Virus record (IMG/VR): IMGVR_UViG_3300043449_002710
Coordinates: 124,001 to 188,000 of that record
Direction: 5' to 3' (one strand)
Length of the DNA stretch: 64,000 bases
The notes under the pieces are model-generated. The model saw only the letters and a list, made by a program, of their open reading frames with translations. It was not told the origin of the DNA and searched no databases. The translations under genes were made by a program, and so were the position numbers. This document shows, in pieces, positions 4,809-46,104 of this stretch (its first letter is position 1; every line of letters begins with the position of its first letter).

Positions 4809-6566
4809 TTAATCCTCATCCGATTTGTAGTACGCAAACGGAAGCCCTTTGCAGAGAGTCCCCTTTTTAATCGCCTTGATGATAGCAGCCGATGTCACCC
4901 CCAAAAAGTCGGCTGCGTGTTTAGGTGTGTAAAAACAGATATTCGTGGAAACTACACGGCAAGCGGATCTCAAGGGACGGGCTTTCTTGGGGGCAGAACC
5001 GTTTTCCCTAAGCCACCTAGCCTTGACCTCGGGCCTAGCCTCTCCACGCAGCACGATATTGATCCAATTCTTATCGATACCGAGCTGATCCGCGATCTTG
5101 GCTGACGGAATTCCGAGTGCTTTGAGTTTGAAGGCTTCGAGCAAATCTTCTTCTGGGATTTGGGTGTAGTCTCTTTTTTTTGGTCCATTCCAAGCTTTGA
5201 AGCGTTCAGTCTTTCGTTCTTTACTAATAAACGAATGAATAGACCCAATTTTATACTTTGACTCAATTTCTTTGACCGAGAGATTGTTAATAAAATAATC
5301 TGAAAAAATGGCACGTATCTCTTTTTCAGTTCTTTTTTTCTTCGAAGTATTCACTTCTATATGAGAAAATTTCTTTTTCCGCTCTGGGTCTATTTTCCCA
5401 TTCAGCAAATGATTTACATAGGTACGACTTGTCTTCAATTCACTCGCTATTTCGGATAACGATTTACCAGATTGGAATAAATTAAAAATAGCGTCTTTTT
5501 CAATTTCAGACATAACCCTTGGTCTAGCTAAGGGCCCGTGCTCTTCCTCAAATCTTCTTAGTAAATGAGGCCTTATTTTACCTGCTTGAATATGTTGAAT
5601 ATAACCAGGGCTCACAGATAAAATTTTTGAAATTTGCTTTAAAGATTTGCCTTTTTTTCTAAGAAAAAAGCTATCCATCAAAACCTTATCTGGTATTAAG
5701 TATGACTCGAAATCATACCCTCGATTCACGTTGTACCCGTTCTCAGTGTGATGAGATTTTAGCTTCTCAATCCACAAAGCTTCCTTGTCTTGAAGTTCTT
5801 TCAATGTCGATGCTGTATCTATTTCCTCGATCCAGAAATTTTCTAATCCAATAGATCGAATCGCTGAATGTATCGGCAAGGGGCTTCCGTTTGTGGAGTC
5901 ATAAGTATGTCGCTGAAATCTGCGAGTTAAGGCCTGAGTAGTCATTCCAACGTAAAGTTTATCGTTTATCTTGTTTTTGATACAATAAATGCTTCCGTGT
6001 ACTTCGGGGTTGCTCGGTTTCAATACATACTTGAAAATTATTTTGGGGGTTTCTTCCACTCGAACCAAGCCAATAGACTCAGCGTATTCTTTTTCTTTTG
6101 TGGACAACCTAACCGCTTTTTGCCAAATATTTTTTTTGTGAATGTAAGAATTTTTTGAATCCGTGTAATGATAAGATGACCGAGTTTTTCCAATTTCTAA
6201 AAAATTGGACGCTTTATAAATAGCTCCACTATGGCCAACTGTAGGATCTGCATAAGATATAACACTGCTGTATTGGGTATTAAGCCTCAACCACTTCAAG
6301 CATTTGCTAATAAAAAAACTAGCTGTGTTTTTGGGCGCTTCTGGCAGAATGACTAACCTACTGAGTTCAATGGCCCGACCATACCTGAGCGCGGATTGAT
6401 GCCTGCTAAAAGAAGAAAAAGTACAGGCACCTAAAAACTTATTTTCTGAATCAAACAAACCAAAACAATGAATGACCGATCGGGAATAAGTCTTAGAATA
6501 ATGATTCTCCGCGATAAATTTTCCTACTTTTTGATCGAACTCAATTCGTCTAACTTCTAGGTTCAT
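4809..6566 (-). CDS. Mom-family (GNAT-like DNA modification) domain fused to GIY-YIG endonuclease with multiple HTH repeats
   Basis: HYS, IELSRLV, ISYADPTVGHSGAIYKASNF (Mom); GSIYCIKNKINDKLYVGMTT..RRF..H, GYN (GIY-YIG); repeated GKSLxxIxxxL HTH units. Confidence 0.8.
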   Translation of the reverse strand: MNLEVRRIEFDQKVGKFIAENHYSKTYSRSVIHCFGLFDSENKFLGACTFSSFSRHQSALRYGRAIELSRLVILPEAPKNTASFFISKCLKWLRLNTQYSSVISYADPTVGHSGAIYKASNFLEIGKTRSSYHYTDSKNSYIHKKNIWQKAVRLSTKEKEYAESIGLVRVEETPKIIFKYVLKPSNPEVHGSIYCIKNKINDKLYVGMTTQALTRRFQRHTYDSTNGSPLPIHSAIRSIGLENFWIEEIDTASTLKELQDKEALWIEKLKSHHTENGYNVNRGYDFESYLIPDKVLMDSFFLRKKGKSLKQISKILSVSPGYIQHIQAGKIRPHLLRRFEEEHGPLARPRVMSEIEKDAIFNLFQSGKSLSEIASELKTSRTYVNHLLNGKIDPERKKKFSHIEVNTSKKKRTEKEIRAIFSDYFINNLSVKEIESKYKIGSIHSFISKERKTERFKAWNGPKKRDYTQIPEEDLLEAFKLKALGIPSAKIADQLGIDKNWINIVLRGEARPEVKARWLRENGSAPKKARPLRSACRVVSTNICFYTPKHAADFLGVTSAAIIKAIKKGTLCKGLPFAYYKSDED

Positions 6567-25709: not shown

Positions 25710-25934
25710 ATGTTTCCCACCAACTATGAAAATTTTTGGGACCTTTTAAAAGACGCGGATTTCGCACGTGGGTTTTTGACCCAATGCTACCATGAAGGGT
25801 TTTCTATCCACGGAATTAGGCATCCAGATGAAATTGAAGACATGCCTTGTACCTTGGTTGTGGAGCTTTCTAGGCAGATCTTGCCGTTTTACTACATGGA
25901 AAAAACCCCAAGCCCCAATTACTGGTTTCATTGA
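25710..25934 (+). CDS. Small hypothetical protein
   Basis: Coupled to flanking genes. Confidence 0.5.
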   Translation: MFPTNYENFWDLLKDADFARGFLTQCYHEGFSIHGIRHPDEIEDMPCTLVVELSRQILPFYYMEKTPSPNYWFH

Positions 25935-28900
25935 TGCGAAAGTCTAAAAAGTTTTTGAACCCAGAAGACCTACTGAGTCAGATCATCAGCAGTGATTTTG
26001 ATCTGTCTCAGTTTGACCAAATCGATGAAAGCCATATCCCACAGCCACCCAATTTCATCGATTGGATCACAGGCAGGGATTTCTGTAACGCAACCCTCCT
26101 ACCTTGGCAGGTTGAAGCCGGGATGCACCTGTTCTCAGATTACTGCCCAGAGTGTTCGAACCCAGAATACATCACCGAGCTATTTGATGAATCGATGGCT
26201 GAGATCCTCGATAACATCCAGTTCTTAGATCAAGGAGTTTGCCCCAAGTGCAAAAAGAATCGATTAGATCTTTTCACCTTGGGTGAAAAGCATCCGACAA
26301 AGCCATCGATTAAATCCGAGTTTATTGGAAATTTGGGCCAGAGAAGCGGAAAGACACTGGCCGAACACACCGAAGTTTTAACCCCCCAGGGGCCTGTTGC
26401 CATCAAAGATATCCAAATTGGGGATATCGTTTATGGCTGGAATCGAGACGGTTCTGTTTCTGAAACAAAAGTAGTCAATAAATTTGATCACGGTATTAAG
26501 CCTGTTCGAGACCTGATTTCTAGGGGTAGGGTACTGGCTTCTTGCACCGACGAGCACCGTTGGCTTACGTGCAGAACCAGTCGTTATGGAAAAGGAACTA
26601 GAAAACAAAGAAAATCAGATTTTTTAGAGTTAAAACTCAAAGACTTCAAGGATAACAAAGATATCGCGATTCATCGTAAATTGATCAAGATTCCTTGTGG
26701 GGAAGTTTCGGAACCCCATGCTTATGCGATTGCGGCCCTTCTTGGAGATGGGTGCTCCCGTCAAGGCACCTCAAATACGATAGATATTTCTTCAGGGGAT
26801 CAAAATGTCCCTAAAAAAGTAGCGTCTGTACTCGGAGCACAAACAATTAAACGAAACTGGGAAGATAACTATACTTGGCATATTCGCGCAGGAGATACTT
26901 ATAGCAGGGAAACATTGAACTGCCACTATTACGCGGAATGGTGCAAGGGTAAATATGCCCACGAAAAGATATGCGATCTTGAGACAATAAAAACTTGGGA
27001 TCGTGAAAGTTGCCTAGAATTCCTCGCCGGACTGATCGACACGGATGGTTCCGTACATGGAACTGGGAGACTAATTGTTGCTTTTGGTTGCCAATCCAGG
27101 TCAGTCGTAGAAGCATTCGCCTATTTGGTTTACCGCCTTTTTCAATACAAGCCAGCAATCCACATGGATAACAGACCGAAATACTTCAATGGTCCAATAT
27201 ATCAGGCAAAGGTAAACTCTACTTTTTTTGCTAAAAGAATTTTGAAAGAGATTGATCCTTATTTGGCGAGCCCAAATAGAAAATGGAAACCCGAATACGA
27301 AATGATTGGGAATCATAACTCCCATTCAGATTATACGAAACCCCAAGCTGGTGAACCCTACCTCTGTCAGACTTATGATATTGAAGTAGGGAATGAAACC
27401 AATCTTTATGTTTTGGCCCACGAAGGTCTTATAACGCACAATTCAAAAATGGTCGCGTTGTCCACAAGCTATCAGCTCAATCGCTGGTTGAGTCTTCACG
27501 ACCCGCTAGGCTTTTATGGGCTACCTCGGATGGAAGTGATCTTGGGGACTTTTTCCGCGCTCTCCGCAGAGCAAGCTGAAGAAAACCTCTGGATGCCATT
27601 CAAGGGATTAATCGACGCATCGCCTTGGTTTAAAAAGTACAATGATTTCCTCAAGTCGGAGGAGAAGCGTCTCTCCATTCCGCTTTGTGACGTGAAAGAC
27701 ACCTATATGTTCTATCCGCACAAAAGACTTCTGATCTCTTTCACAGGATCGGATGACCGGAAAAAACGCGGTCGGACTCGATTGTTTGGTGCGATTGACG
27801 AAATCGCTTTCTTGAATTCGGAAGTCGGGACTTCCAAAAAGAAGGTGATGGATGCGGATAAAAACTACGCCGCTCTCAACAACTCTCTTTCCACCATCCG
27901 GCAAAAGGCATTGATGCGATTGGCAGAGGGGCATTTCAATACGATCATGCCCATCATGTATAACGCCTCCTCGCCTTATAACGTCCAAGACAAAATCATG
28001 CGGTTGACCAAATCAGCCCCAGACAATCCCTTTGCGGTAGTGATTCACCGAGCTACTTGGGAGTCGAATCCAGACTACTCAGAAAAAACCTGTCGCGCCA
28101 TCAACCCAGGCCTTTCTCAAGTCGAGTTCGAGCGCGACTTTGGTGCAATCCCCCCGTTTTCGGATTCCCCCTATATTGGGGATGCTCGGGTGATGGAAAA
28201 GCTCTGCGCCCACAAAGATCACTATCGACCTCTTTTGAATGTGACTCGCGAAGTCCATGTCGATATGCTTGGAGACAAATATCTCTTTTTAAGAGCCAAG
28301 GCGCATCAGCTCGATAAGAATACGCCAAGGCTTTTGGCACTCGACAACGGGTACAATCAGAATGCGTTTGGTGCGGCGATCTTTGGCTATGATTCGATTC
28401 AAAAAAAGCCTGTGCTTCAGTTTTTAGTGAGCCTCTACCCAGATCCTCAATCCAATCTCTCGATTCATTTCCCATCGATGTTCGAGAATTTTATTTTGCC
28501 GATTATCCAAGGCCTCAATATTAAGCACGTCTTTTATGACCGCTGGCAGTCCCTTGATCAGATCCAGCGGTTAAGAGATATGAAAATCAACGCCGAAGCG
28601 CATTCGCTTTCTTTTGAGAAAGACATGCTGCCTTTCAAGCAGCAGCTTTTGTCTGGGAACATGGTGCTACCACCACTAGAGATCGCATCCATGCAAGAAG
28701 TCAAAGATGCGGTCAACCCCACGCAGATGACAACAGATAAACCGGTGGCCAATTTGATCTGGCAAACGCTGACTGTGAGACAGGTCGGTAAAAAAGTCTT
28801 AAAGCCTTTGGACGGGGATGACGATCTATTCCGAGCTTTTGTACTCGGGGGATCTCGCTTTTTGTCAGACGAGATCCAAAGAATTTATGCAACTTATGCT

Positions 28901-29035
28901 GGAATCAAACAAGCGGCTCAAAACGCCCAAGGCTTTTTAGGAAGCTTTCATTCTCGAAGCGGGGGAGGCAGTAGTGCAACCCCCAATCGAGGCAATCAGA
29001 TTTCTATCGCCAAGTATCGTGGCTTTTCCAAATAA
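25931..29035 (+). CDS. terL: Large terminase subunit with intein
   Basis: LLPWQ, Walker A GQRSGK/S split by intein, RGRT..AIDE Walker B, ASSP, RNase H-like LALD...YDRWQS...DDLFRA. Confidence 0.9.
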   Translation: MMRKSKKFLNPEDLLSQIISSDFDLSQFDQIDESHIPQPPNFIDWITGRDFCNATLLPWQVEAGMHLFSDYCPECSNPEYITELFDESMAEILDNIQFLDQGVCPKCKKNRLDLFTLGEKHPTKPSIKSEFIGNLGQRSGKTLAEHTEVLTPQGPVAIKDIQIGDIVYGWNRDGSVSETKVVNKFDHGIKPVRDLISRGRVLASCTDEHRWLTCRTSRYGKGTRKQRKSDFLELKLKDFKDNKDIAIHRKLIKIPCGEVSEPHAYAIAALLGDGCSRQGTSNTIDISSGDQNVPKKVASVLGAQTIKRNWEDNYTWHIRAGDTYSRETLNCHYYAEWCKGKYAHEKICDLETIKTWDRESCLEFLAGLIDTDGSVHGTGRLIVAFGCQSRSVVEAFAYLVYRLFQYKPAIHMDNRPKYFNGPIYQAKVNSTFFAKRILKEIDPYLASPNRKWKPEYEMIGNHNSHSDYTKPQAGEPYLCQTYDIEVGNETNLYVLAHEGLITHNSKMVALSTSYQLNRWLSLHDPLGFYGLPRMEVILGTFSALSAEQAEENLWMPFKGLIDASPWFKKYNDFLKSEEKRLSIPLCDVKDTYMFYPHKRLLISFTGSDDRKKRGRTRLFGAIDEIAFLNSEVGTSKKKVMDADKNYAALNNSLSTIRQKALMRLAEGHFNTIMPIMYNASSPYNVQDKIMRLTKSAPDNPFAVVIHRATWESNPDYSEKTCRAINPGLSQVEFERDFGAIPPFSDSPYIGDARVMEKLCAHKDHYRPLLNVTREVHVDMLGDKYLFLRAKAHQLDKNTPRLLALDNGYNQNAFGAAIFGYDSIQKKPVLQFLVSLYPDPQSNLSIHFPSMFENFILPIIQGLNIKHVFYDRWQSLDQIQRLRDMKINAEAHSLSFEKDMLPFKQQLLSGNMVLPPLEIASMQEVKDAVNPTQMTTDKPVANLIWQTLTVRQVGKKVLKPLDGDDDLFRAFVLGGSRFLSDEIQRIYATYAGIKQAAQNAQGFLGSFHSRSGGGSSATPNRGNQISIAKYRGFSK
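26354..27442 (+). mobile_element. Intein (363 aa) with LAGLIDADG homing endonuclease, Thr at position 1
   Basis: TLAEHTEVLT (block A), CTDEHRW (B), ALLGDG and LAGLIDTDG, TYDIEV (F), ITHN/S (G). Confidence 0.92.
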
Positions 29036-30123: not shown

Positions 30124-30212
30124 TGGTGCCGAGGATCGGAGTCGAACCGATACGTCCCTTGCGAAACTCAGGATTTTAAATCCTGTGCGTCTACCAATTT
30201 CGCCACCCCGGC
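30124..30212 (-). tRNA. tRNA-Leu (anticodon TAA), CCA encoded
   Basis: GCCGGGG acceptor, TGGTAGA D loop, CAGGA-TTTAAAA-TCCTG anticodon arm, long variable arm, GTTCGA, ACCA. Confidence 0.95.
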
Positions 30213-38824: not shown

Positions 38825-39586
38825 TCAAGATTTTTTCACTAATTGACGTGCATATTCTTTTGAGCCGTAAGCTTCTTCGAAATACTTCTGAAGCTTAGCG
38901 GATTCGTTTGGAGCTTTTTCAGCAGCTTGCGCTTGAAGATCCAAAACCGCTTCTTTGGCGATCACGGCTTCCTTGCCTTCTTTGGTCTTGGCTTTGAAGC
39001 CGCCTTTGATGGAAGCTGTGATTTCGAGAGGCTGAACTTCGCCTTTGAAGTAAGCTTTCACTAAATCGCCTGCGCCGATCATCTCTTTGGCAATCGCAAC
39101 AGAGGCGAGAGAGACTGAAGGGGTTTCGGTAACGAACATCCGGTTACGGCGAGCAGCAATGATCTGCTCGATGTTTTCTTTGCCGATCTTGGCTAGGACT
39201 TTCTTACCGTCCTGATCTTTGACTTCCCAGTGGTCGCCCAAGGCATTGTCGAGGTACATCATGCCTGCAATCACAGGGGTCATCTTCGACTTGTCCTGAG
39301 CTTCGCTCATTTCACGAGTCGGGACATTGAGCTTGGCCACGATCGAAACCGAGGTCGGCTTGATCGAGCAAGAAGCCATGACTGGCATGATCTTGCCTTC
39401 GAAAGTCTTGGCGAAAAAGCGTTCAATGTCATCACCCTTGGGGCGACCGAGCTTCGGTTCATATTCAATCAGAACGTGTGCGGAAACGGCATCCAATTTT
39501 TGGAAGTCCGCAATGTCCAAGTCCCCTCTGACGCCTGTAGCGAAAGAGGCTGCGACGACTTTTTTGTAGACCCTGTCAAAATTCAT
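38825..39586 (-). CDS. Putative head/core structural protein
   Basis: Biased codons, late-type motif, SD AAGGAG, several hydrophobic-x-A motifs. Confidence 0.55.
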   Translation of the reverse strand: MNFDRVYKKVVAASFATGVRGDLDIADFQKLDAVSAHVLIEYEPKLGRPKGDDIERFFAKTFEGKIMPVMASCSIKPTSVSIVAKLNVPTREMSEAQDKSKMTPVIAGMMYLDNALGDHWEVKDQDGKKVLAKIGKENIEQIIAARRNRMFVTETPSVSLASVAIAKEMIGAGDLVKAYFKGEVQPLEITASIKGGFKAKTKEGKEAVIAKEAVLDLQAQAAEKAPNESAKLQKYFEEAYGSKEYARQLVKKS

Positions 39587-39654: not shown

Positions 39655-42246
39655 TTAACGCGCACCAACACCTAATCGGTTATTGGTGTTAAACTGTTGA
39701 GTTGCGGCTGTACCAATATCGAGCACAAGCTTTTGTGTTTGAGATGTTCCAACAATCTGTCCGTTCACATAGATGGGTGGAGCGGCTGCATTGGTAACAG
39801 CCCCAGGTACGGCGGTCGGAGATGCGGCAGACATCGGCATTGGTGCCTGGGCAACTGGTGTCGCAGCTATTTCCCCAGAATAGGCAGTTGGGACTTTTGG
39901 AACTAAAATAGTTTTCTTGGATTCAACCGGAAAAATTTGATCTATTGTTTTAGAACTAGCCAAATTAACTGAATCGGAAATATTTTCTACTGAGTTCTCT
40001 AAAAGATTTTTTTCACTGGCGGATCTTAATTTATTAATTTGCTCTAGAAGAGGGGCAACCATTTTTTCATGCCGAGCCTTTTCGTAAGCTCTGTCTTCTG
40101 GTGTTTTAGCTTTTTTTAACCTCTCCAAATAATTTTGATCTTCAATGTCTTTTTTAGCAGAGTATTCTTCGATTTGTTTGTTTCGGCTGTATTGGTCAAA
40201 AATAGATAATCCCATCGATGCGGCTGCGGCAACACCAACAGCGGTCGCCCCGCCTGAAAACTTTGCTATCAATAAACCTAGAATTCCAGCTACACCAACC
40301 GAAATTTTACCTACGTTAGTATCTAACGCAGTTATAGCTTGTTGCAAACCTCCGCCAGTTAACCAAGTTCTGGCGACATTCTTTTTCTTCTCTTCTTCCG
40401 CAATTTGCTTCATTTTTTCTTCAGAGCCTTGAAGGTTATCTAATTTCTCTTGTAAATGTGCGGCCAAAGATTGGTCTCCCTTGGATTTAGCTATTTCTAA
40501 ATCTTTTTTAACCGCCTCAATCGCTTCTTCTCGCTTCTTTTTAATCTGTTCTTCAGAGGTGCCTAGAGCTTTCTTTTCTTTCTCCATCAGAATGCCTTCG
40601 ATTTTCTTTTTCAATTCGAACCGATGCTCTTCTTTTTTATAGTATTCAGCAGATGCCTCTTCCATCCCGTACATAAGCTTAATCTGCTCTTTGCTGAGAT
40701 TTTTAAAATTGTTTGCTTGCTCCGTCGCTTGCTTGCCGAGCTTTGCTTGTTGAACCATTTGATCCGCAACTAGCGGATCTGTAATTCCATAAATTTGTTG
40801 AATCGCTTGGACTGCGTTAGCGCCACTTTTTGAAACAATGTCATTGATGGATTTTTCCATAGCTTCAATGCCCACCCCAGTATCTTGTAGTAAGCGTTGA
40901 ACCATTTGTTGTTTAGTATACTCAGAAGCTTTATTGCTTGGGCTCATGATTGCAGCAATTTGTTTAGAAAGCCCAGGCTTGGCAGCCTCTAGTTGATCCC
41001 GCAAAGCCCCTGTAATATTTGAACCCGCCATTGAAGCTCGGATCGTTTTTGAGAGATCTCTGCCAGATAAAATTCTAGTCCAATCGGGGGCTTCTGTAGT
41101 CAACTTTTTGATGTAAGTTGTAGCGCCTTTCAGAGAAGCTTCGTAACTATAACCTTGAGCTTGCAAAGCCACCATGTTTTTGGTGATCATTTTTGCTAGT
41201 AAATCTTGCTCCTGAGCGCCGGATTGCGATTCTCTAGCTAAATCAAAAATAACTTTGGTGACATCTCTACCGATGATTACTGTTTTTTGTAATTCTGTGT
41301 TCGTGCTCTGAGTAATGTCACGGATGTTTTTTAAAACCATAGCAGATTGAGTGCCTGTTCTTCCGAATTTTAAATTCGCTTCCACAACATAATCTGTAGC
41401 ATCGCCCAAGGATACTTGGAGAGCGGAAGCTAAGTAACCGGTAACCTCGGTGAGGTTTTCCATGCTCTCAGCGGAATGATCAGACCAAGCTGTGATTTGA
41501 GAGAATCTTTTGAAGGAATCAGCAGTTTCTTCGGCTGAAATACCCAAACCCGCCATAGCTATTTGAGCTTTTCCCAGACTCCAACTGTAATCCTTTGCTC
41601 TATCTGCTAAAACCTTAAAGTCATCGTTTATATTTCCAGTCATCCCGATGAATGAACCGGAAGTGAGAGAAATATCTACTACGTCTTGTACTGCTCTACC
41701 CGCGCCTTTCAGCCCTGAAATCAATCTTTCAGTAGAAAGAATCCACCCGAGAGCCTGAGCCACACCGGAAGAAAAAAGCTTTCCTAAAAGACCAACCGAT
41801 TTTTTTGTTTCTTCTAAAGCTCCTTTTTGAGCTTTTATCTGCCGCTCAGTAATGCTGAGTTGAGCTTCTTCTTTTCTGATCTTTTCACCCAAAGCTTCCA
41901 AGGATTTTTTTTCTAAGGCTAAGCGCTCCTTAAGGTCTTTAGTTTCTTCTTCCTTGGCCGATTCAATGCTTTTTTCAAGTTCTTTGATTTTATCAAGTTG
42001 AGAAATTCTATCTACATAAAGCTTAGATAGCTTTCCCTCGATAACCAAAGCTTCTTTAGACCCTTTGGCGATAGCATCGTAAATGGATGCCAAAGTGTTG
42101 AGCTGCTTAGATGCTGCTGTTGCCCCAGTTTTGGCTGCCTCCGCTGCTTTTCTGGCAAAGACATCTGCAGTAGCTTCAGCCGATTTGATGGTCGCTTCTA
42201 AGCCTTTGATCGCGGCATTAGCTTGATCTATATTCTTCTCAGCCAT
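39655..42246 (-). CDS. Tape-measure-like tail protein
   Basis: Long helical A/K/Q-rich protein with hydrophobic Gly-rich segments, downstream of the frameshifting chaperone. Confidence 0.6.
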   Translation of the reverse strand: MAEKNIDQANAAIKGLEATIKSAEATADVFARKAAEAAKTGATAASKQLNTLASIYDAIAKGSKEALVIEGKLSKLYVDRISQLDKIKELEKSIESAKEEETKDLKERLALEKKSLEALGEKIRKEEAQLSITERQIKAQKGALEETKKSVGLLGKLFSSGVAQALGWILSTERLISGLKGAGRAVQDVVDISLTSGSFIGMTGNINDDFKVLADRAKDYSWSLGKAQIAMAGLGISAEETADSFKRFSQITAWSDHSAESMENLTEVTGYLASALQVSLGDATDYVVEANLKFGRTGTQSAMVLKNIRDITQSTNTELQKTVIIGRDVTKVIFDLARESQSGAQEQDLLAKMITKNMVALQAQGYSYEASLKGATTYIKKLTTEAPDWTRILSGRDLSKTIRASMAGSNITGALRDQLEAAKPGLSKQIAAIMSPSNKASEYTKQQMVQRLLQDTGVGIEAMEKSINDIVSKSGANAVQAIQQIYGITDPLVADQMVQQAKLGKQATEQANNFKNLSKEQIKLMYGMEEASAEYYKKEEHRFELKKKIEGILMEKEKKALGTSEEQIKKKREEAIEAVKKDLEIAKSKGDQSLAAHLQEKLDNLQGSEEKMKQIAEEEKKKNVARTWLTGGGLQQAITALDTNVGKISVGVAGILGLLIAKFSGGATAVGVAAAASMGLSIFDQYSRNKQIEEYSAKKDIEDQNYLERLKKAKTPEDRAYEKARHEKMVAPLLEQINKLRSASEKNLLENSVENISDSVNLASSKTIDQIFPVESKKTILVPKVPTAYSGEIAATPVAQAPMPMSAASPTAVPGAVTNAAAPPIYVNGQIVGTSQTQKLVLDIGTAATQQFNTNNRLGVGAR

Positions 42247-43331
42247 TAGCGCCTCTTGTACTGATCAGCATTCATGGTCTGATCGATCACATTGTCAGAA
42301 AGCCCAAAAACATCTCGCAATAATAATTTGAGTGTATGAGAAGAACCCGTAAATAGAAGGTTTGCCTCCTCGGACTGTTCTTCATAATCCACGATCTTAG
42401 TTGTGTTTTCAGTTAACCCCTCTTTGGAAAGCCAATCGGATAATTTTTGACGATCCACTGGGATCGTTTCAATAGAGATCTTGCTCAGGGGTATGGCTCT
42501 TTTTAGGGTTTGAACTTTCTCGGGTTCTTCTTGAGTCTTTTTCTGCTCTTCTGTTTTCGTTTTCTGAACTAAGGGCTTCCCACTTTTGATCTTTTTGATG
42601 GCGTCTTCTTTGAATCCGATCTTTTTAAGAAGCTCTTCTGCGAGATCCTTAGGTCCACTATAAGAAAGTTCTTTGGTGTCCTTGTCAAAGTGGATGGAGT
42701 CAGGCCCGTCAAAATAAAAATCCTTGTCCTGATAAAAGCGAGTGACCAAGGTTTCAATCTGGTCCTCGGTCTTTGGGCTCAAAAGATTTTCTGAATGAAC
42801 TAAGACCGTAAACTGAATGTCAGCTAATTGGTTGGCTTGCTCTTTCTTAGCTTGTTCAAGAAGCTTATTAGCTTCATTTTCTTTCATTCCAAAAGAATTG
42901 AGCAACGACTCGGCAATATCCAAAGGACCTTGGTAGCTGAGTTTTAAGCTCTCGGGCTCGAACTTGACATCATTGGGGCTATCAAATCGTAACCTGTTCT
43001 CCGTGTAGAAAAGAGCTACTTTTTTCTCGATCTCCTGGGGAGTCTTGGGTGTGGATAGTTTCTCTGGAGTAAGCTTAACTTGAAACTCTATTTTATCCTT
43101 AGAGCGCTCCACTCGGAGCAATCGCTCCAGCTCTTCGGGCTCTAAATCCAGAAGATTTCTCTTTTGTAACAATTCTCTGACCCAAGGCGAGTCTTTAGTT
43201 TGAGTATACCGTGTCTTAATCTTGTTAACTAAATCGTCTATTTTACCAGCCAACACCCGTTGGAAAGCTCGGGTGCTTTTGGTGTCGGCGGAACCTGTCA
43301 GAAAATGCAAAAGGGTATTCCTTGAAGGCAT
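42246..43331 (-). CDS. Hypothetical protein with internal domain repeat
   Basis: Two FY..F.D.P..F..LSY.GP.D.AE.LL...G units and a degenerate third. Confidence 0.6.
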   Translation of the reverse strand: MPSRNTLLHFLTGSADTKSTRAFQRVLAGKIDDLVNKIKTRYTQTKDSPWVRELLQKRNLLDLEPEELERLLRVERSKDKIEFQVKLTPEKLSTPKTPQEIEKKVALFYTENRLRFDSPNDVKFEPESLKLSYQGPLDIAESLLNSFGMKENEANKLLEQAKKEQANQLADIQFTVLVHSENLLSPKTEDQIETLVTRFYQDKDFYFDGPDSIHFDKDTKELSYSGPKDLAEELLKKIGFKEDAIKKIKSGKPLVQKTKTEEQKKTQEEPEKVQTLKRAIPLSKISIETIPVDRQKLSDWLSKEGLTENTTKIVDYEEQSEEANLLFTGSSHTLKLLLRDVFGLSDNVIDQTMNADQYKRR

Positions 43332-43340
43332 ATATTAAAA

Positions 43341-44953
43341 CTAACCTTCACCTGTCGGGACTTTGGGAAGTTTCTTTTGCCCGAAGAAATCCAAGAACTC
43401 TTGCGGAGAAACCTTCGAAAGATCGACCACCACTTCATTGGGCGCTTTTTTATAGCCTGAGGGTAATACCATTCCAGCACTGCCAACCATCCGCATCAAA
43501 CCTTCCCTGAACTCGGGTCGGATCGCAAAGGCCAAAGGCACAAGCACCTTATCGGCATTCTTGTATTCAGCGGATTCCCCATTTTTTTTACCCCAGGACC
43601 TAATCTCACCGGCTGAGAAAGTGGTGCCCAGCAAGCGACCGATCTGGCCCAAGCGTTCGTTCTCAACTTCCTTGACCCAGAAATAAAGAAAGGCTCTTTC
43701 CTCTAGGCTTAGGTCCCTTAGTTCTTCCCAGCTACGGTTGGTGGCGGCCCAAAGATACCCGAGCACCGAAAGCTCGGGATCGTCCTTGGTCGCCTTTACT
43801 GCAAAGGGAGGGCTTCTACCTCAGAGGTCAAACCACGATCATCCATGGGGATGCCATGGATCTGGCAGAAGACTGGCACTCCTTTTTCCACCGCCAAGTC
43901 ATAAACTTCTTTGCAGTCATCTACAGGGCAGGTGAACTTTCTTTGCTTAGGATCAAAAGAGGATTTCAGTCCCAAGTCTTTGAAAGAAACTTCAAAGGCG
44001 GTGTAGATTTTTTCAACCAAGTTAGGATTAAAGGGGAACAAATTGTCCAGGGAGGGTTCTCCTTGGTACATCTCGATCAAGGTTTGGGCAGTCAGGATTC
44101 TAACCTCCGTGGGAGGATTCAAAGGGTCTTTGACCGAACCTTCTGGAACTAATTCAAGCACTTCAGCAATCGGCATTTTCTCAACTCGAACAATACCTGT
44201 GGCTGCCGTACAAAGCTTCAGCATCATTTTGACTGCTTCAGTTTGACCCGCTACTTCTTGGATCTTATTGAGAACCCAAGGATAAACAGAAGACGGTGGA
44301 GGTAGAAGCTCGAAACCCACGTCTTCAACTATCACTTCCACGGGCTTTACTCTTTCAAGTGAAAGTTTCTCGCGCATCTTTTTCAAGACCGGATTCACTT
44401 CTTTTTTGAAAGTCTTTGGGGTTGCCGCTGCCTGCGGCTGCGATTGTTGTTGCTGGGCTGCTTCTTTTTCAGCCTTTCTTTGTAGTTCGAGTTTTCTTTT
44501 TTTCAATTCCAATTCTTTCAACTCGATCTCAAGCAGTTCTTCTTCAGTCAAATTACTACCTTCTTCCAAAGCTTTGGGTTCTGATGCTGGGGTTTTTTCC
44601 ACGGGTTCCACTTTCTGTTCTAATTTTTTGCCCTTAGTCTTGAGTAATTCTTCTACTGTGATCCCTCGTTCTTTGGCGATCTCTCGCAAAGCGTACTCAT
44701 TCAACTCAGGATCAAATTTTCGAGTTTGATTCCCGGCAAAAGGTTCCTCGGGCTTTGCCTTTTCTTCCATGTATTTTGAAACTTGATCTTGGGGAATCAC
44801 CGGGAAAGGAGCAGGAGTAGGATCGCCTAGATCTTTTCTTTTATTAGTAGGGCGCTCTGGCATCTTGGGCTTTGAAGGCTGAAAATCATCCACCACAGGA
44901 CGTGCATCTTTAAATCGACTACCCATGGTCTGCTTGATCTTTTCGTCATCCAT
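43341..44953 (-). CDS. Tail assembly chaperone pair: G (43796..44953) and -1 frameshifted GT (about 537 aa)
   Basis: C CCT TTG heptamer at 43802..43808 two codons before the stop; -1 frame open into ORF 43341..43766. Confidence 0.75.
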
Positions 44954-45035
44954 CTACTAACACTCCGCAATAAGTTATCTGCTCGATGTCAGATATTTTA
45001 CTAATTTCGGTAAATCTTAATCAGAAGGACTTGAA

Positions 45036-45260
45036 ATGAGCAGGTTGCGACTTGAACTAGGAAAAATCTATCAAACCTTAGGGGCTGGTACTGTCACGAT
45101 TATCGAAAAGAAAATCACGGGCAGAAAAATCTTCACTGGCCAGCTTCAAGACGGAACCTTGATTCAATATTTCAGAAACGGAAGATTCTCCAATGCCTCT
45201 CAAAGAAAGGGAGGCCATCGTTTTGACATTGTCATAAAGCCTGTAGAAGTTTATCAATAG
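45036..45260 (+). CDS. Small hypothetical protein
   Basis: SD AAGGA; LELGKIYQT..G.V.I pattern. Confidence 0.55.
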   Translation: MSRLRLELGKIYQTLGAGTVTIIEKKITGRKIFTGQLQDGTLIQYFRNGRFSNASQRKGGHRFDIVIKPVEVYQ

Positions 45261-46104
45261 CCCCTGATTCGTGTGCTTTGGCAAGCAATTTTAAGAATTC
45301 ACAATAGCCTGCCTGATCCAAATACTTCCAGATCACTTCGGCGGGCTGAAATCTCTCAAATCTTCCCACATTCCGATCCAAGACAAACTTCTTTCGAAGC
45401 TCATCGTGCATCTTTTTTCTGCCTTGCCAAACCTCAACAAACTCTTCCACCAATCGATCCACGGCTTGTTTGACCGACAGCTTCTGAGTTTCAATCCTCT
45501 CGTCCACGATTTCAGGATCTCTTGGGTTTTCTTTCTGGGCTTGCAGGGCTTTCTTAAGGACCGACCATTGCCTAGAAACATTCCCCATCAAAAGATCGAT
45601 TTCTTCGGCTTTCTTTTCGGCCATTTCAATGATGGGCTTAAAATAAATCTCAGGATCAAAGTCCTTTGGAAGAATCAAAGGAGGAAGCTTCCAGCGATCC
45701 CGCATCACATCGTAGGAGGCATCGGCAACCTCAACTTGCTCGGTCTGATCCGATGGCTTCACAAAAAGATGGATGACATATCCAGCCCAGGGAATCTCGA
45801 CATTCTTGAAAGCCTCTTGAAGAATCTCTTCATCGCCTTTGAATTTTTCCCAATCAATGTAGCACGAACAGTCAATGTCAGCGCCGCTGTGATACTGATA
45901 AGTCGCCGCTCCGCCATACAACATGACGCCAATCAGATCCGCCCCAAACTTTTTTAGTCGGTAGCGAGCTTCTTTGAGAATCTCTGCGCGAAGCTTGGGC
46001 TGAAGCCTAGGGAGCGGCTTATCTTCTTCATAAAGCCACACCTCTGGCGGAAGAGTCTTGCGCGGAAAATCTAAAATCCCAGCTTCAATTACGTGAGCGG
46101 CCAT
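45232..46104 (-). CDS. Pol-beta-like nucleotidyltransferase with short VIEA leader
   Basis: LYGGAATYQYHSGADIDC; YDV..D.W; GTTATTTTT upstream. Confidence 0.7.
   Translation of the reverse strand: MAAHVIEAGILDFPRKTLPPEVWLYEEDKPLPRLQPKLRAEILKEARYRLKKFGADLIGVMLYGGAATYQYHSGADIDCSCYIDWEKFKGDEEILQEAFKNVEIPWAGYVIHLFVKPSDQTEQVEVADASYDVMRDRWKLPPLILPKDFDPEIYFKPIIEMAEKKAEEIDLLMGNVSRQWSVLKKALQAQKENPRDPEIVDERIETQKLSVKQAVDRLVEEFVEVWQGRKKMHDELRKKFVLDRNVGRFERFQPAEVIWKYLDQAGYCEFLKLLAKAHESGAIDKLLQAL

What the first reader, a model, noticed from the sequence alone, without database searches (positions are those of the whole stretch)
43743..43808. Programmed -1 frameshift signal with long stimulatory hairpin
Seen on minus strand: CTC CCT TTG CAG TAA gives the correctly phased heptamer C-CCT-TTG (43808..43802). 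After a 7-nt spacer comes a 52-nt bulged hairpin GGCG/CGCC, CCAAGGA/TCTTTGG, CCCGAGC/GCTCGGG (43794..43743). The -1 frame reads AVKATKDDPELSVLGYLWAAT and is continuous with ORF 43341..43766, whose GTG start is buried in the hairpin. Known: lambda G/GT-type tail chaperones frameshift upstream of tape-measure genes. Unusual here: large G (385 aa, C-terminal Zn knuckle), strong RNA structure, and an intervening gene before the tape-measure-like gene.
Basis: partly seen in the sequence, partly recalled or inferred. Interest (0 to 1): 0.68.

Follow-up and report, generated by a model that had tools for sequence, protein, structure and literature searches.

The report
Tail chaperone frameshift with conserved hairpin
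An uncultivated 223-kb phage makes two versions of a tail-building helper protein by letting ribosomes slip back one base at a conserved C-CCU-UUG site in front of a conserved RNA hairpin; this is a well-known phage trick in an unusually large protein of a new sequence family.

Summary
On the minus strand, the 385-aa ORF (43796..44953) ends CTC CCT TTG CAG TAA. The in-phase heptamer C_CCT_TTG lies at 43808..43802. A 7-nt spacer and a 52-nt hairpin (43794..43743, -29 to -31 kcal/mol) follow. The -1 frame stays open to 43341.

Ten independent relatives with DNA (36-61% protein identity) all keep C_CCT_TT[G/A] in phase. All have one sense codon and a stop after it, and a hairpin starting 6-7 nt downstream. 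Base pairs of the lower stem covary at wobble positions. All have a -1 ORF whose conserved protein sequence begins at the heptamer, and none shares a start codon for it. Five more loci known only from gene tables also have the downstream ORF in the -1 frame.

Residues 185-328 of the upstream protein fold like tail assembly chaperones (HK97, YqbN). The 863-aa gene two places downstream is a tape measure protein.

I conclude this is a lambda G/GT-type programmed -1 frameshift giving a 537-aa fusion. Its unusual features are a multidomain "G" with a zinc ribbon, a conserved stimulatory hairpin, a weak heptamer, and an extra conserved gene before the tape measure gene. No expression data exist. 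Mechanism confidence is about 0.8. Interest is moderate.

The parts
43796..44953 (-). 'G' ORF, 385 aa (0 frame), including the TAA stop at 43798..43796. It defines a new sequence family with 20 homologues of 373-434 aa.
   Evidence: No Pfam, PHROG or NCBIfam hit.
44636..44722 (-). Conserved helix-turn-helix-like motif of G (about residues 78-106, FDPELNE.AL..A..RGI.V..LL). The resemblance to HeH/SAP motifs is my inference only.
   Evidence: Invariant columns. Helices 82-96 and 100-105 in the model. No family hit.
44453..44545 (-). Long helix or coiled coil of G (residues 137-167).
   Evidence: pLDDT about 89. Coiled-coil matches.
43970..44401 (-). Tail-assembly-chaperone-like fold of G (residues 185-328).
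   Evidence: 2ob9 (HK97 TAC): Z 6.4-6.9, 99-100 of 104-107 residues aligned. 3klu (YqbN): Z 5.8. The next unrelated rows are at 4.1-4.6. TACs also appear in BFVD and the Atlas.
43826..43942 (-). C-terminal CCCH zinc-ribbon-like module of G (residues 338-376; C342, C347, C363 and H366 are invariant).
   Evidence: Small zinc-ribbon matches.
43821..43823 (-). TGA stop in the -1 frame, 4 codons before the heptamer. It sets the upstream limit of the shift window.
   Evidence: The distance is 2-7 codons in 9 of 10 relatives and 18 in L009.
43802..43808 (-). Slippery heptamer C_CCU_UUG (P-site CCU Pro383, A-site UUG Leu384).
   Evidence: Six of its seven positions are invariant in 10 of 10 sequences; the seventh is G or A.
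43795..43801 (-). 7-nt spacer CAGUAAA. It contains the last sense codon and the 0-frame stop.
   Evidence: The stop position is fixed in 10 of 10 sequences.
43743..43794 (-). 52-nt bulged stimulatory hairpin. The lower stem is GGCG/CGCC plus CC/GG, and there is an upper stem.
43341..43808 (-). 'T' region read in the -1 frame from the heptamer (155 codons plus stop). 153 of these are appended to G residues 1-384 to give GT of 537 aa.
42246..43331 (-). Conserved intervening gene, 361 aa, with an internal domain duplication. Function unknown.
   Evidence: It sits at the same place in all relatives.
39655..42246 (-). Tape measure protein, 863 aa.
   Evidence: Helical and Ala/Lys/Glu-rich with hydrophobic segments. 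Atlas feature hits to TMP clusters score 0.94-0.95. An orthologue 35-46% identical hits phrog_167 'tail length tape measure protein' at 6.3e-9.

Best explanation
This is the tail assembly chaperone locus of an uncultivated phage, a 223-kb IMG/VR virus record. It is expressed through a programmed -1 ribosomal frameshift of the lambda G/GT type.

Most ribosomes translate the 385-aa 'G' protein and stop at TAA 43798..43796. A minority pause when the 52-nt hairpin, which starts 7 nt after the heptamer, reaches the mRNA entry channel. At that moment tRNA-Pro is on CCU in the P site and tRNA-Leu is on UUG in the A site. Both tRNAs re-pair one base back, on CCC and UUU, and translation continues in the -1 frame (GCA GUA AAG ...). 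The result is a 537-aa G-T fusion with the junction ...EALPL-AVKATK....

By analogy with lambda (inferred, not shown here), the chaperone-fold domain of G and GT coats the 863-aa tape measure protein. The T extension would then recruit the tail tube protein. The frameshift efficiency would fix the G:GT ratio.

Shown here: the signals, their conservation and covariation, coding in the -1 frame from the heptamer, the chaperone-like fold, and the tape measure neighbour.

Inferred: that the shift really occurs, its efficiency, and the binding partners.
For: 1. Anatomy is at the stated coordinates.
2. The heptamer is conserved in phase in 10 of 10 relatives that share only 36-61% protein identity: CCCTTTG in 7 and CCCTTTA in 3.
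   - Pro is always CCT, although this genome uses CCT for only 32% of Pro codons.
   - Leu is always TTR, although TTR makes up only 42% of Leu codons.
   - The preceding codon always ends in C.
   - Neighbouring wobble positions differ in 50-70% of sequence pairs.
3. The 0-frame stop is always exactly one codon after the heptamer. A -1-frame stop lies 2-7 codons before it in 9 of 10.
4. 20 of 21 family members end ...P-L-x-stop, and none is an in-frame fusion of about 540 aa.
5. The downstream ORF is in the -1 frame in all 10 loci with DNA. By gene coordinates it is also in the -1 frame in 5 loci without DNA.
6. The T protein alignment is conserved from its first residues (P1, F2, A6, D10, G17 invariant), upstream of any start codon.
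   - The first canonical start sits at offset 42, 57, 96 or 105, depending on the genome, without a shared Shine-Dalgarno sequence.
   - Variability by codon position in the -1 frame is 0.40/0.30/0.60, and 0.35/0.24/0.57 within the hairpin itself. That is a coding signature.
7. Every relative folds into a hairpin of -19 to -31 kcal/mol beginning 6-7 nt after the heptamer.
   - The lower stem is paired in 93% of cells.
   - Pair 30:75 is GC in 6, AU in 3 and CG in 1. Pair 33:72 is CG in 7, GC in 2 and UA in 1. The columns of pair 30:75 (and column 33) are third codon positions of the -1 frame.
   - 0 of 500 shuffles reach the observed pairing or covariation. Slid controls give 33-45% paired against 76% observed.
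8. C_CC.U_UU.G and C_CC.U_UU.A are among the shift-prone, under-represented heptamers in E. coli genes (PMC4066793).
9. The fold of G residues 185-328 matches the HK97 tail assembly chaperone and YqbN above all other PDB chains. Tail assembly chaperones also top the viral and Atlas libraries.
10. A tape measure protein lies two genes downstream and tail fibre genes are nearby.
Against: - There is no expression, proteomic or reporter evidence. Only one DNA run holds the sequence and no RNA run does.
- In E. coli, C_CCU_UUG is a weak motif: 0.15% without a stimulator and 0.3-0.7% with IS911 or IS3 stimulators. C_CCU_UUA gives 0.4-2.9%. Efficiency may therefore be low, and it depends on an unknown host's tRNA-Leu.
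- The fold match is moderate (Z 6.4-6.9; the tool warns that Z under 8 can be a common arrangement).
- No sequence family for G or T was hit.
- The T fold could not be modelled (pLDDT 60).
- No tube or sheath gene was identified next to the locus.
- An extra gene separates GT from the tape measure gene.
- Many relatives have an ATG at T codon 33, so some independent synthesis of a shorter T cannot be excluded in them.
- One homologue (P0007) ends ...LAF rather than ...PLx, and its DNA could not be fetched.
Confidence: 0.8

Rival explanations
1. G and T are separate proteins. T is made by termination-reinitiation or translational coupling at a start codon just after the G stop (GTG 43766 in the window), and the heptamer is incidental.
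For: Gene callers annotate T as a separate ORF in every relative. A GTG or ATG exists at offset 42 in 4 of 10 sequences and an ATG at offset 96-99 in 8 of 10.
Against: - No start codon is shared by all ten sequences, and none has a consistent Shine-Dalgarno sequence.
- The window itself has Leu at the offset-96 position.
- The 14-32 residues upstream of those starts are conserved as protein with a codon-phase signature.
- GTG 43766 lies inside a -30 kcal/mol hairpin.
- This model does not explain the synonymous-site invariance of CCC TTT R.
Confidence: 0.06
2. The frameshift is real, but the hairpin is not its stimulator. It would serve instead as a transcription terminator or attenuator, an RNase site or an mRNA stabiliser between G and T.
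For: The simple scan flags the inner stem as terminator-like, with 5 T in the following 8 nt. To my knowledge, lambda G/GT does not need a strong 3' structure.
Against: - The T-rich tail is the 3' arm of the longer conserved helix. It is not conserved as a U-tract in relatives.
- Terminator-like sites in the region are no more frequent than in shuffles (2 against 3.6).
- The distance from the heptamer is fixed at 6-7 nt in 10 of 10, which is the spacing expected of a -1 frameshift stimulator.
- The weak heptamer makes a stimulator plausible.
Confidence: 0.1
3. The split is an assembly or sequencing indel, or a pseudogene: G-T is really one ORF broken by an error.
For: A single-base indel would give the same two-ORF picture in one genome.
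Against: The same frame arrangement, stop position and heptamer recur in 10 independent assemblies from different samples and in 5 further gene tables. None of the 20 homologues is a single fused ORF.
Confidence: 0.01
4. The recoding is real, but the protein is not a tail assembly chaperone. It could, for example, be a DNA-binding or scaffolding protein with a coincidental fold resemblance.
For: - G has extra modules not known in tail assembly chaperones: a helix-turn-helix-like motif, a coiled coil and a zinc ribbon.
- There is no sequence-family hit, and Z is only 6.4-6.9.
- The complex prediction with the tape measure protein gave no verdict.
- A gene intervenes before the tape measure gene.
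Against: Three independent structure libraries put tail assembly chaperones first. The match covers nearly the whole HK97 and YqbN chains. The tape measure gene and tail fibre genes follow in the same operon direction. A -1 frameshift at the 3' end of the chaperone gene is the hallmark of this family.
Confidence: 0.12

Closest known systems
Phage lambda gpG/gpGT and the conserved tail assembly chaperone frameshift of long-tailed dsDNA phages (Xu et al. 2004, as cited in PMC10885494; HK97 chaperone structure 2ob9)
   Same: - Two overlapping ORFs upstream of the tape measure gene.
- An in-phase X_XXY_YYZ heptamer a few codons before the 0-frame stop.
- A downstream ORF in the -1 frame without its own start.
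- A chaperone-like fold in the upstream protein.
- An expected minor fusion product.
   Different: - G is 385 aa rather than the roughly 100-150 aa of typical chaperones (the HK97 and YqbN chains are 104-119 residues). It carries an N-terminal conserved motif plus a coiled coil, and a CCCH zinc ribbon after the chaperone fold.
- There is no sequence similarity to Pfam or PHROG chaperone or T families.
- The heptamer is C_CCU_UUR, not G_GGA_AAG.
- A conserved, covarying 52-nt hairpin follows the site.
- A conserved 227-365-aa gene sits between GT and the tape measure gene.
Bacillus subtilis prophage protein YqbN (PDB 3klu)
   Same: Second-best structural match, to G residues 184-327 (Z 5.8, 103 of 119 residues aligned).
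   Different: It is a single-domain protein. Sequence identity is 12%, and no recoding comparison was made here.
Hairpin- or pseudoknot-stimulated bacterial -1 frameshift sites (E. coli dnaX; IS911 and IS3 transposases; PMC4066793, PMC5009743)
   Same: A heptamer, then a spacer of about 6-7 nt, then a stable 3' structure. In 6 of 10 family members there is also a GAGG 10 nt upstream, reminiscent of the dnaX internal Shine-Dalgarno sequence.
   Different: - The gene function differs.
- The heptamer is a weak one in E. coli assays (0.15-0.7% for CCCUUUG), unlike A_AAA_AAG.
- The upstream GAGG is not conserved in the other 4 relatives and coincides with Glu-Val or Glu-Ala codons. Its role is undetermined.

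Membership tests
Lambda G/GT-type tail assembly chaperone with programmed -1 frameshift | Two overlapping ORFs, with the second in the -1 frame relative to the first | tested here: met
   Window, 9 further loci with DNA, and 5 loci by gene coordinates.
Lambda G/GT-type tail assembly chaperone with programmed -1 frameshift | In-phase slippery heptamer X_XXY_YYZ inside the short overlap, conserved among relatives | tested here: met
   C_CCT_TTG or C_CCT_TTA in 10 of 10. The overlap is bounded by a -1-frame stop 2-7 codons upstream (18 in one) and a 0-frame stop one codon downstream.
Lambda G/GT-type tail assembly chaperone with programmed -1 frameshift | Second ORF lacks its own conserved start and ribosome binding site, and is conserved as protein from the shift site | tested here: met
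Lambda G/GT-type tail assembly chaperone with programmed -1 frameshift | Position between the major tail (tube) gene and the tape measure gene | tested here: inconclusive
   The tape measure gene lies downstream but is separated by one conserved gene. No tube or sheath gene was identified upstream: the upstream neighbour is a conserved 290-aa protein of unknown role.
Lambda G/GT-type tail assembly chaperone with programmed -1 frameshift | Chaperone (gpG-like) fold of the upstream protein | tested here: met
   Model residues 185-328 against 2ob9 give Z 6.4-6.9, and against 3klu Z 5.8. These are ranks 1-2 of 48,161 chains, with the next rows at 4.1-4.6. Tail assembly chaperones also lead in BFVD and the Atlas. 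The strength is moderate.
Lambda G/GT-type tail assembly chaperone with programmed -1 frameshift | Sequence membership in a described chaperone or T family (Pfam Phage_TAC families, PF06223 Phage_tail_T, PHROG chaperones) | tested here: not met
   No hit for G or T in Pfam, PHROGs, NCBIfam or PDB sequences. The only trace is a weak Atlas feature lead to a cluster that is 23% PF06223 (score 0.79).
Lambda G/GT-type tail assembly chaperone with programmed -1 frameshift | Both G and GT are made in a fixed ratio and are needed for tail assembly; G binds the tape measure protein and T binds the tube protein | not testable with these tools
   No RNA or protein data. The complex prediction gave no verdict.
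Canonical -1 programmed ribosomal frameshift signal | Stable 3' RNA structure 5-9 nt after the heptamer, supported by covariation | tested here: met
   The spacer is 7 nt (6 in L001). Folding energy is -19 to -31 kcal/mol in 10 of 10. There are compensatory pairs at wobble positions, and 0 of 500 shuffles reach the observed score. A pseudoknot variant was not supported (37.5% paired).
Canonical -1 programmed ribosomal frameshift signal | Measured frameshifting above background that depends on the heptamer and the structure | not testable with these tools
   Only literature values for the bare heptamers in E. coli are available.

The most novel reading that the evidence does not exclude
The phage may tune its own recoding. 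The same genome encodes a tRNA-Leu with anticodon UAA (window 30124..30212, minus strand). This tRNA reads exactly the A-site codons of the conserved heptamer (UUG/UUA). It could re-pair with UUU better than host tRNA-Leu isoacceptors. If so, the G:GT ratio at this otherwise weak C_CCU_UUR site would be set by a phage-supplied tRNA together with the hairpin.

Separately, the extra modules of G (conserved helix-turn-helix-like motif, coiled coil, zinc ribbon) could give the chaperone a second job not known for lambda-type chaperones.

The evidence does not exclude either idea, but supports them only by co-occurrence in one genome.
Probability: 0.08. Interest if true: 0.7.

Novelty: new variant of a known kind. 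Interest (0 to 1): 0.4.

Why it matters
Tail assembly chaperone frameshifting is the most widespread recoding event in tailed phages, but gene callers miss it. In all 15 relatives examined, T is annotated as a separate ORF with an arbitrary start or not called at all, and neither G nor T has a family name.

This locus gives four things:
1. A correct annotation (a 537-aa GT product) for a clade of uncultivated large freshwater and sediment phages.
2. A clean natural example of a weak heptamer (C_CCU_UUR) paired with a conserved, covarying hairpin. That is useful for training frameshift predictors and for studying how stimulator strength compensates for heptamer weakness.
3. An unusually large multidomain chaperone with a zinc ribbon placed directly before the shift site.
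4. A conserved extra gene between GT and the tape measure gene whose role in tail assembly is unknown.

It does not change the known principle.

Tried and rejected
- **DNA and protein similarity to GenBank phages.** No match for the 6.6-kb region or for G. A scan of IMG/VR viral contigs with the G alignment found no relative.
- **Sequence families.** Pfam, PHROGs, NCBIfam and PDB sequence searches for G and T gave nothing usable.
- **Structure of T.** The model was poor (pLDDT 60) and its fold search was meaningless. The Atlas feature search gave only a weak lead to Phage_tail_T (0.79). I make no claim about the T fold.
- **Foldseek against the PDB with the G model.** No significant hit. HK97 was only rank 3 at E 0.58. 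The exhaustive aligner was needed to find the match.
- **Complex prediction of G 185-385 with tape measure protein 1-780.** No verdict (score 0.00). This is not evidence either way.
- **Pseudoknot** between the hairpin loop and downstream ACCG. Rejected: 37.5% of cells paired.
- **Terminator reading of the hairpin.** Considered and judged unlikely.
- **Sheath Pfam families in the 223-kb record.** None found, so the tail type is left open. The record is estimated to be 81% complete.
- **Sequencing runs.** Only one DNA run was found, probably the source, and no RNA run. I did not use read laying because contigs of the source sample could add nothing.
- **tRNA-Leu(UAA) in relatives' records.** The records are not held.
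- **DNA for P0002, P0003, P0007, P0011, P0019 and P0021.** It could not be fetched.
- **The other strong heptamer-plus-hairpin in the genome** (CCCAAAC, genome position 117943). It lies in non-coding sequence.
- **Literature search for the heptamer string.** It returned only microRNA noise.

Only genetic code 11 was used.
Full report
**Setting**

The window is bases 124001-188000 of a single 223,260-bp IMG/VR virus record that CheckV estimates to be 81% complete. Its genes are those of a large tailed phage:
- several collagen-like tail fibre proteins and a YadA-stalk/DUF2793 fibre;
- a Mom-like protein, a sigma-70-like protein, a MoxR/VWA pair, a toprim protein and an intein-bearing large protein;
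- five tRNA genes.

There is no nucleotide or G-protein similarity to any GenBank phage.

**Checking the observation**

- The 385-aa ORF 43796..44953 ends CTC CCT TTG CAG TAA.
- C_CCT_TTG occupies 43808..43802 in the X_XXY_YYZ phase.
- After the 7-nt spacer CAGTAAA, a 52-nt bulged hairpin runs from 43794 to 43743.
- It folds at -29.1 kcal/mol (z -3.5). With 3-nt flanks it folds at -30.6 kcal/mol (z -4.3, 0 of 200 shuffles).
- The -1 frame has a TGA at 43823..43821. It is then open through the heptamer to 43341 and reads PPFAVKATKDDPELSVLGYLWAAT....
- The first canonical start in that frame, GTG 43766, lies within the hairpin.
- Simultaneous slippage on CCU-UUG would give 384 + 153 = 537 residues.

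*Chance.* In-phase slippery heptamers alone are frequent in this genome: 456 in 56,121 codon positions, five of them CCCTTTG. The heptamer by itself therefore means little. The hairpin is exceptional: only 3 of 29,762 58-nt windows of the genome fold as well. Of 3,795 XXXYYYZ heptamers in any phase, only two are followed by a structure of -30 kcal/mol or better. The other sits in sequence closed in all frames.

**Relatives**

The word search found 20 homologues of the 385-aa protein, with 36-61% identity and lengths of 373-434 aa. None is of fused length. Twenty of the 21 family members end ...P-L-x-stop.

I obtained DNA for nine distinct relatives from different metagenomes: L001, L002, L003 (same as L005), L008, L009, L010, L012, L014 and L016.

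*The shift site.* In all ten sequences:
- The heptamer is in phase. It is CCCTTTG in seven and CCCTTTA in three.
- It is followed by exactly one sense codon and then TAA or TAG.
- Pro is always CCT, Leu always TTR, and the codon before always ends in C.
- This genome uses CCT for only 32% of Pro codons and TTR for only 42% of Leu codons.
- Flanking wobble positions differ in half or more of sequence pairs.
- The -1 frame is closed 2-7 codons before the heptamer in nine sequences and 18 codons before it in one. The window in which a shift yields a long product is therefore tiny and contains the heptamer.

*The T region.* The -1 frame product (alignment A3) is conserved along its whole length of 152-160 residues, including the first residues: P1, F2, A6, D10 and G17 are invariant. 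No start codon is shared. The first ATG, GTG or TTG falls at offset 42, 57, 96 or 105, and no consistent Shine-Dalgarno sequence precedes it.

Mean pairwise difference by codon position in the -1 frame is 0.40/0.30/0.60 downstream of the stop. It is 0.35/0.24/0.57 within the hairpin segment itself. That stretch is therefore under protein-coding selection in the -1 frame before any possible initiation codon.

In five further loci for which only gene tables were available, the downstream ORF is again in the -1 frame by coordinates.

**RNA structure**

The ten junctions align without gaps (A2). Each folds into a hairpin of -19 to -31 kcal/mol that starts 7 nt after the heptamer (6 nt in L001).

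On the consensus structure:
- The lower stem is paired in 93% of cells and the upper stem in 77%.
- Pair 30:75 is G-C in six, A-U in three and C-G in one. Pair 33:72 is C-G in seven, G-C in two and U-A in one.
- The columns of pair 30:75, and column 33, are third positions of -1-frame codons. These changes are synonymous or near-synonymous for the protein and compensatory for the RNA.
- No shuffle out of 500 reaches the observed pairing or covariation score.
- Sliding the partners by 1-3 columns drops pairing from 76% to 33-45%.
- With only ten related sequences this is good but not phylogeny-corrected evidence.

Two alternative readings of the structure did not hold:
- A loop-to-downstream pseudoknot seen in the window is not conserved (37.5% paired).
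- The terminator-like flag on the inner stem reflects the U-rich 3' arm of the longer helix.

**What the proteins are**

*G.* Neither G nor T matches any Pfam, PHROG, NCBIfam or PDB sequence. An AlphaFold model of G built on the 21-sequence alignment is confident over residues about 200-380.

An exhaustive structural comparison with 48,161 PDB representatives gave:
- rank 1: the HK97 tail assembly chaperone (2ob9; Z 6.4, 100 of 104 residues aligned, model residues 185-328);
- rank 2: YqbN (3klu; Z 5.8);
- then only coiled-coil noise at 4.6 or below.

The second-look alignment gives Z 6.9 and 5.8, with the next row at 4.1. The viral library lists several proteins named tail assembly or tape measure chaperone. 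The Atlas shape search puts a 'Tail assembly chaperone' cluster first, with TM 0.55 normalised by the target. Each score is moderate on its own, but the agreement across libraries and the full coverage of the small chaperone chains make the fold assignment reasonable.

G also carries three other elements:
- an N-terminal conserved motif, FDPELNE.AL..A..RGI.V..LL (the HeH-like reading is my inference);
- a long helix at residues 137-167;
- an invariant C-x4-C...C-x2-H zinc-ribbon-like module at residues 338-376, directly before the shift site.

*The 863-aa protein.* It is helical and Ala/Lys/Glu-rich with two hydrophobic segments. Its nearest Atlas clusters are tape measure proteins, with scores of 0.94-0.95. 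One of its orthologues, 35-46% identical over the full length, hits phrog_167 'tail length tape measure protein' at 6.3e-9.

*Gene order.* The order G, T, a 227-365-aa gene, the tape measure gene and a roughly 253-aa gene is kept in all relatives.

**Mechanism**

The best-supported reading is a lambda G/GT-type programmed -1 ribosomal frameshift. tRNA-Pro on CCU and tRNA-Leu on UUG/UUA re-pair on CCC and UUU while the hairpin resists unwinding at the entry channel.

In the E. coli survey of all heptamers, C_CC.U_UU.G and C_CC.U_UU.A are among the under-represented, shift-prone patterns. They are weak, though:
- CCCUUUG gives 0.15%, 0.30% and 0.70% with no stimulator, the IS911 stimulator and the IS3 stimulator;
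- CCCUUUA gives 0.37%, 0.68% and 2.9% (PMC4066793 Table S3).

A low-efficiency site fits a chaperone whose fusion form is needed in small amounts. It may also explain why a strong stimulator is conserved. The true efficiency in the unknown host cannot be inferred.

A GAGG lies 10 nt upstream of the heptamer in six of ten sequences. This recalls the dnaX internal Shine-Dalgarno sequence. It coincides with Glu-Val or Glu-Ala codons and is absent in four sequences, so I leave it undetermined.

The roles of G (binding the tape measure protein) and of T (recruiting the tube protein) are inferred from lambda. The one complex prediction gave no verdict.

**Rivals**

- *Independent initiation of T.* Contradicted by the conserved coding sequence upstream of all candidate starts and by the synonymous invariance of the heptamer.
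- *Assembly error.* Excluded by ten independent assemblies.
- *A non-stimulatory role for the hairpin.* Cannot be excluded without mutants, but fits the fixed 6-7-nt spacing poorly.
- *A non-chaperone function.* Remains possible at roughly one in eight, given the moderate Z-scores and the extra domains.

**Comparison and novelty**

The principle is textbook: the conserved frameshift in tail assembly chaperone genes (Xu et al. 2004, as cited in PMC10885494; reviewed in PMC5009743). The differences are:
- a new sequence family for both parts;
- a three-fold larger, multidomain G with a zinc ribbon;
- a weak C_CCU_UUR heptamer;
- a conserved hairpin with covariation;
- an additional conserved gene before the tape measure gene.

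I rate it a new variant of a known kind, of moderate interest.

**Limits**

- There are no expression data.
- DNA is missing for ten family members, including the one exception, P0007.
- The T fold is unresolved.
- The tube or sheath gene was not located.

Noticed in passing
window 30124..30212 (-): A phage-encoded tRNA-Leu with anticodon UAA, one of five tRNAs in the 223-kb record (Thr-UGU, Gln-UUG, Tyr-GUA, Asn-GUU, Leu-UAA). It decodes UUA/UUG, the A-site codon of the conserved slippery heptamer. TTA and TTG make up 42% of Leu codons in the phage.
   Followed up: partly
window 42246..43331 (-): The 361-aa gene between GT and the tape measure gene contains an internal tandem domain duplication (40% identity over 77 aa, E 1e-18) and possibly a third, degenerate copy. 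Orthologues of 227-365 aa sit at the same place in all relatives (27-32% identity). The function is unknown and there is no family hit.
   Followed up: partly
window 44954..45231 and 45232..46104 (-); L008-L016 upstream of G: In most relatives a 110-132-aa ORF overlaps the start of G by 28-34 nt. The window's genome has no trace of it (tblastn). It has instead a 278-nt AT-rich intergenic stretch. The next gene upstream (290 aa, with weak NTP_transf_2 and phrog_36119 hits) is much better conserved (65-75% identity) than G itself.
   Followed up: partly
G000:C1 about 117,860..117,943 (-), about 6 kb before the window start: A near-perfect hairpin of about 57 nt (-30.7 kcal/mol) follows CCCAAAC in sequence closed in all three frames. 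It is one of the strongest local structures in the genome. It could be a terminator or another RNA or DNA element.
   Followed up: partly
window 25931..29035 (+): A 1034-aa ORF with a LAGLIDADG_3 hit at residues 362-413. This suggests an intein or homing endonuclease insertion in a large protein with no other family match.
   Followed up: no
window 4809..6566 (-): An unusual fusion in a 585-aa ORF: a Mom-family domain (DNA modification), a GIY-YIG nuclease domain and several helix-turn-helix motifs. A Mom-like gene also lies near the chaperone module in relative L012.
   Followed up: no
window 38825..38845 (-): An AAAAAAT heptamer at the 3' end of the 253-aa ORF, followed by a -28.7 kcal/mol structure. 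It most likely marks an intergenic terminator before the 66-aa ORF rather than a recoding site.
   Followed up: no
protein P0007 (JGI sample 3300059835; no DNA held): This is the only family member whose C-terminus is ...NLAF rather than ...PLx. No downstream T gene was called in the remaining 850 nt or so of its contig. It may use a different shift site or have a start-less T ORF.
   Followed up: partly
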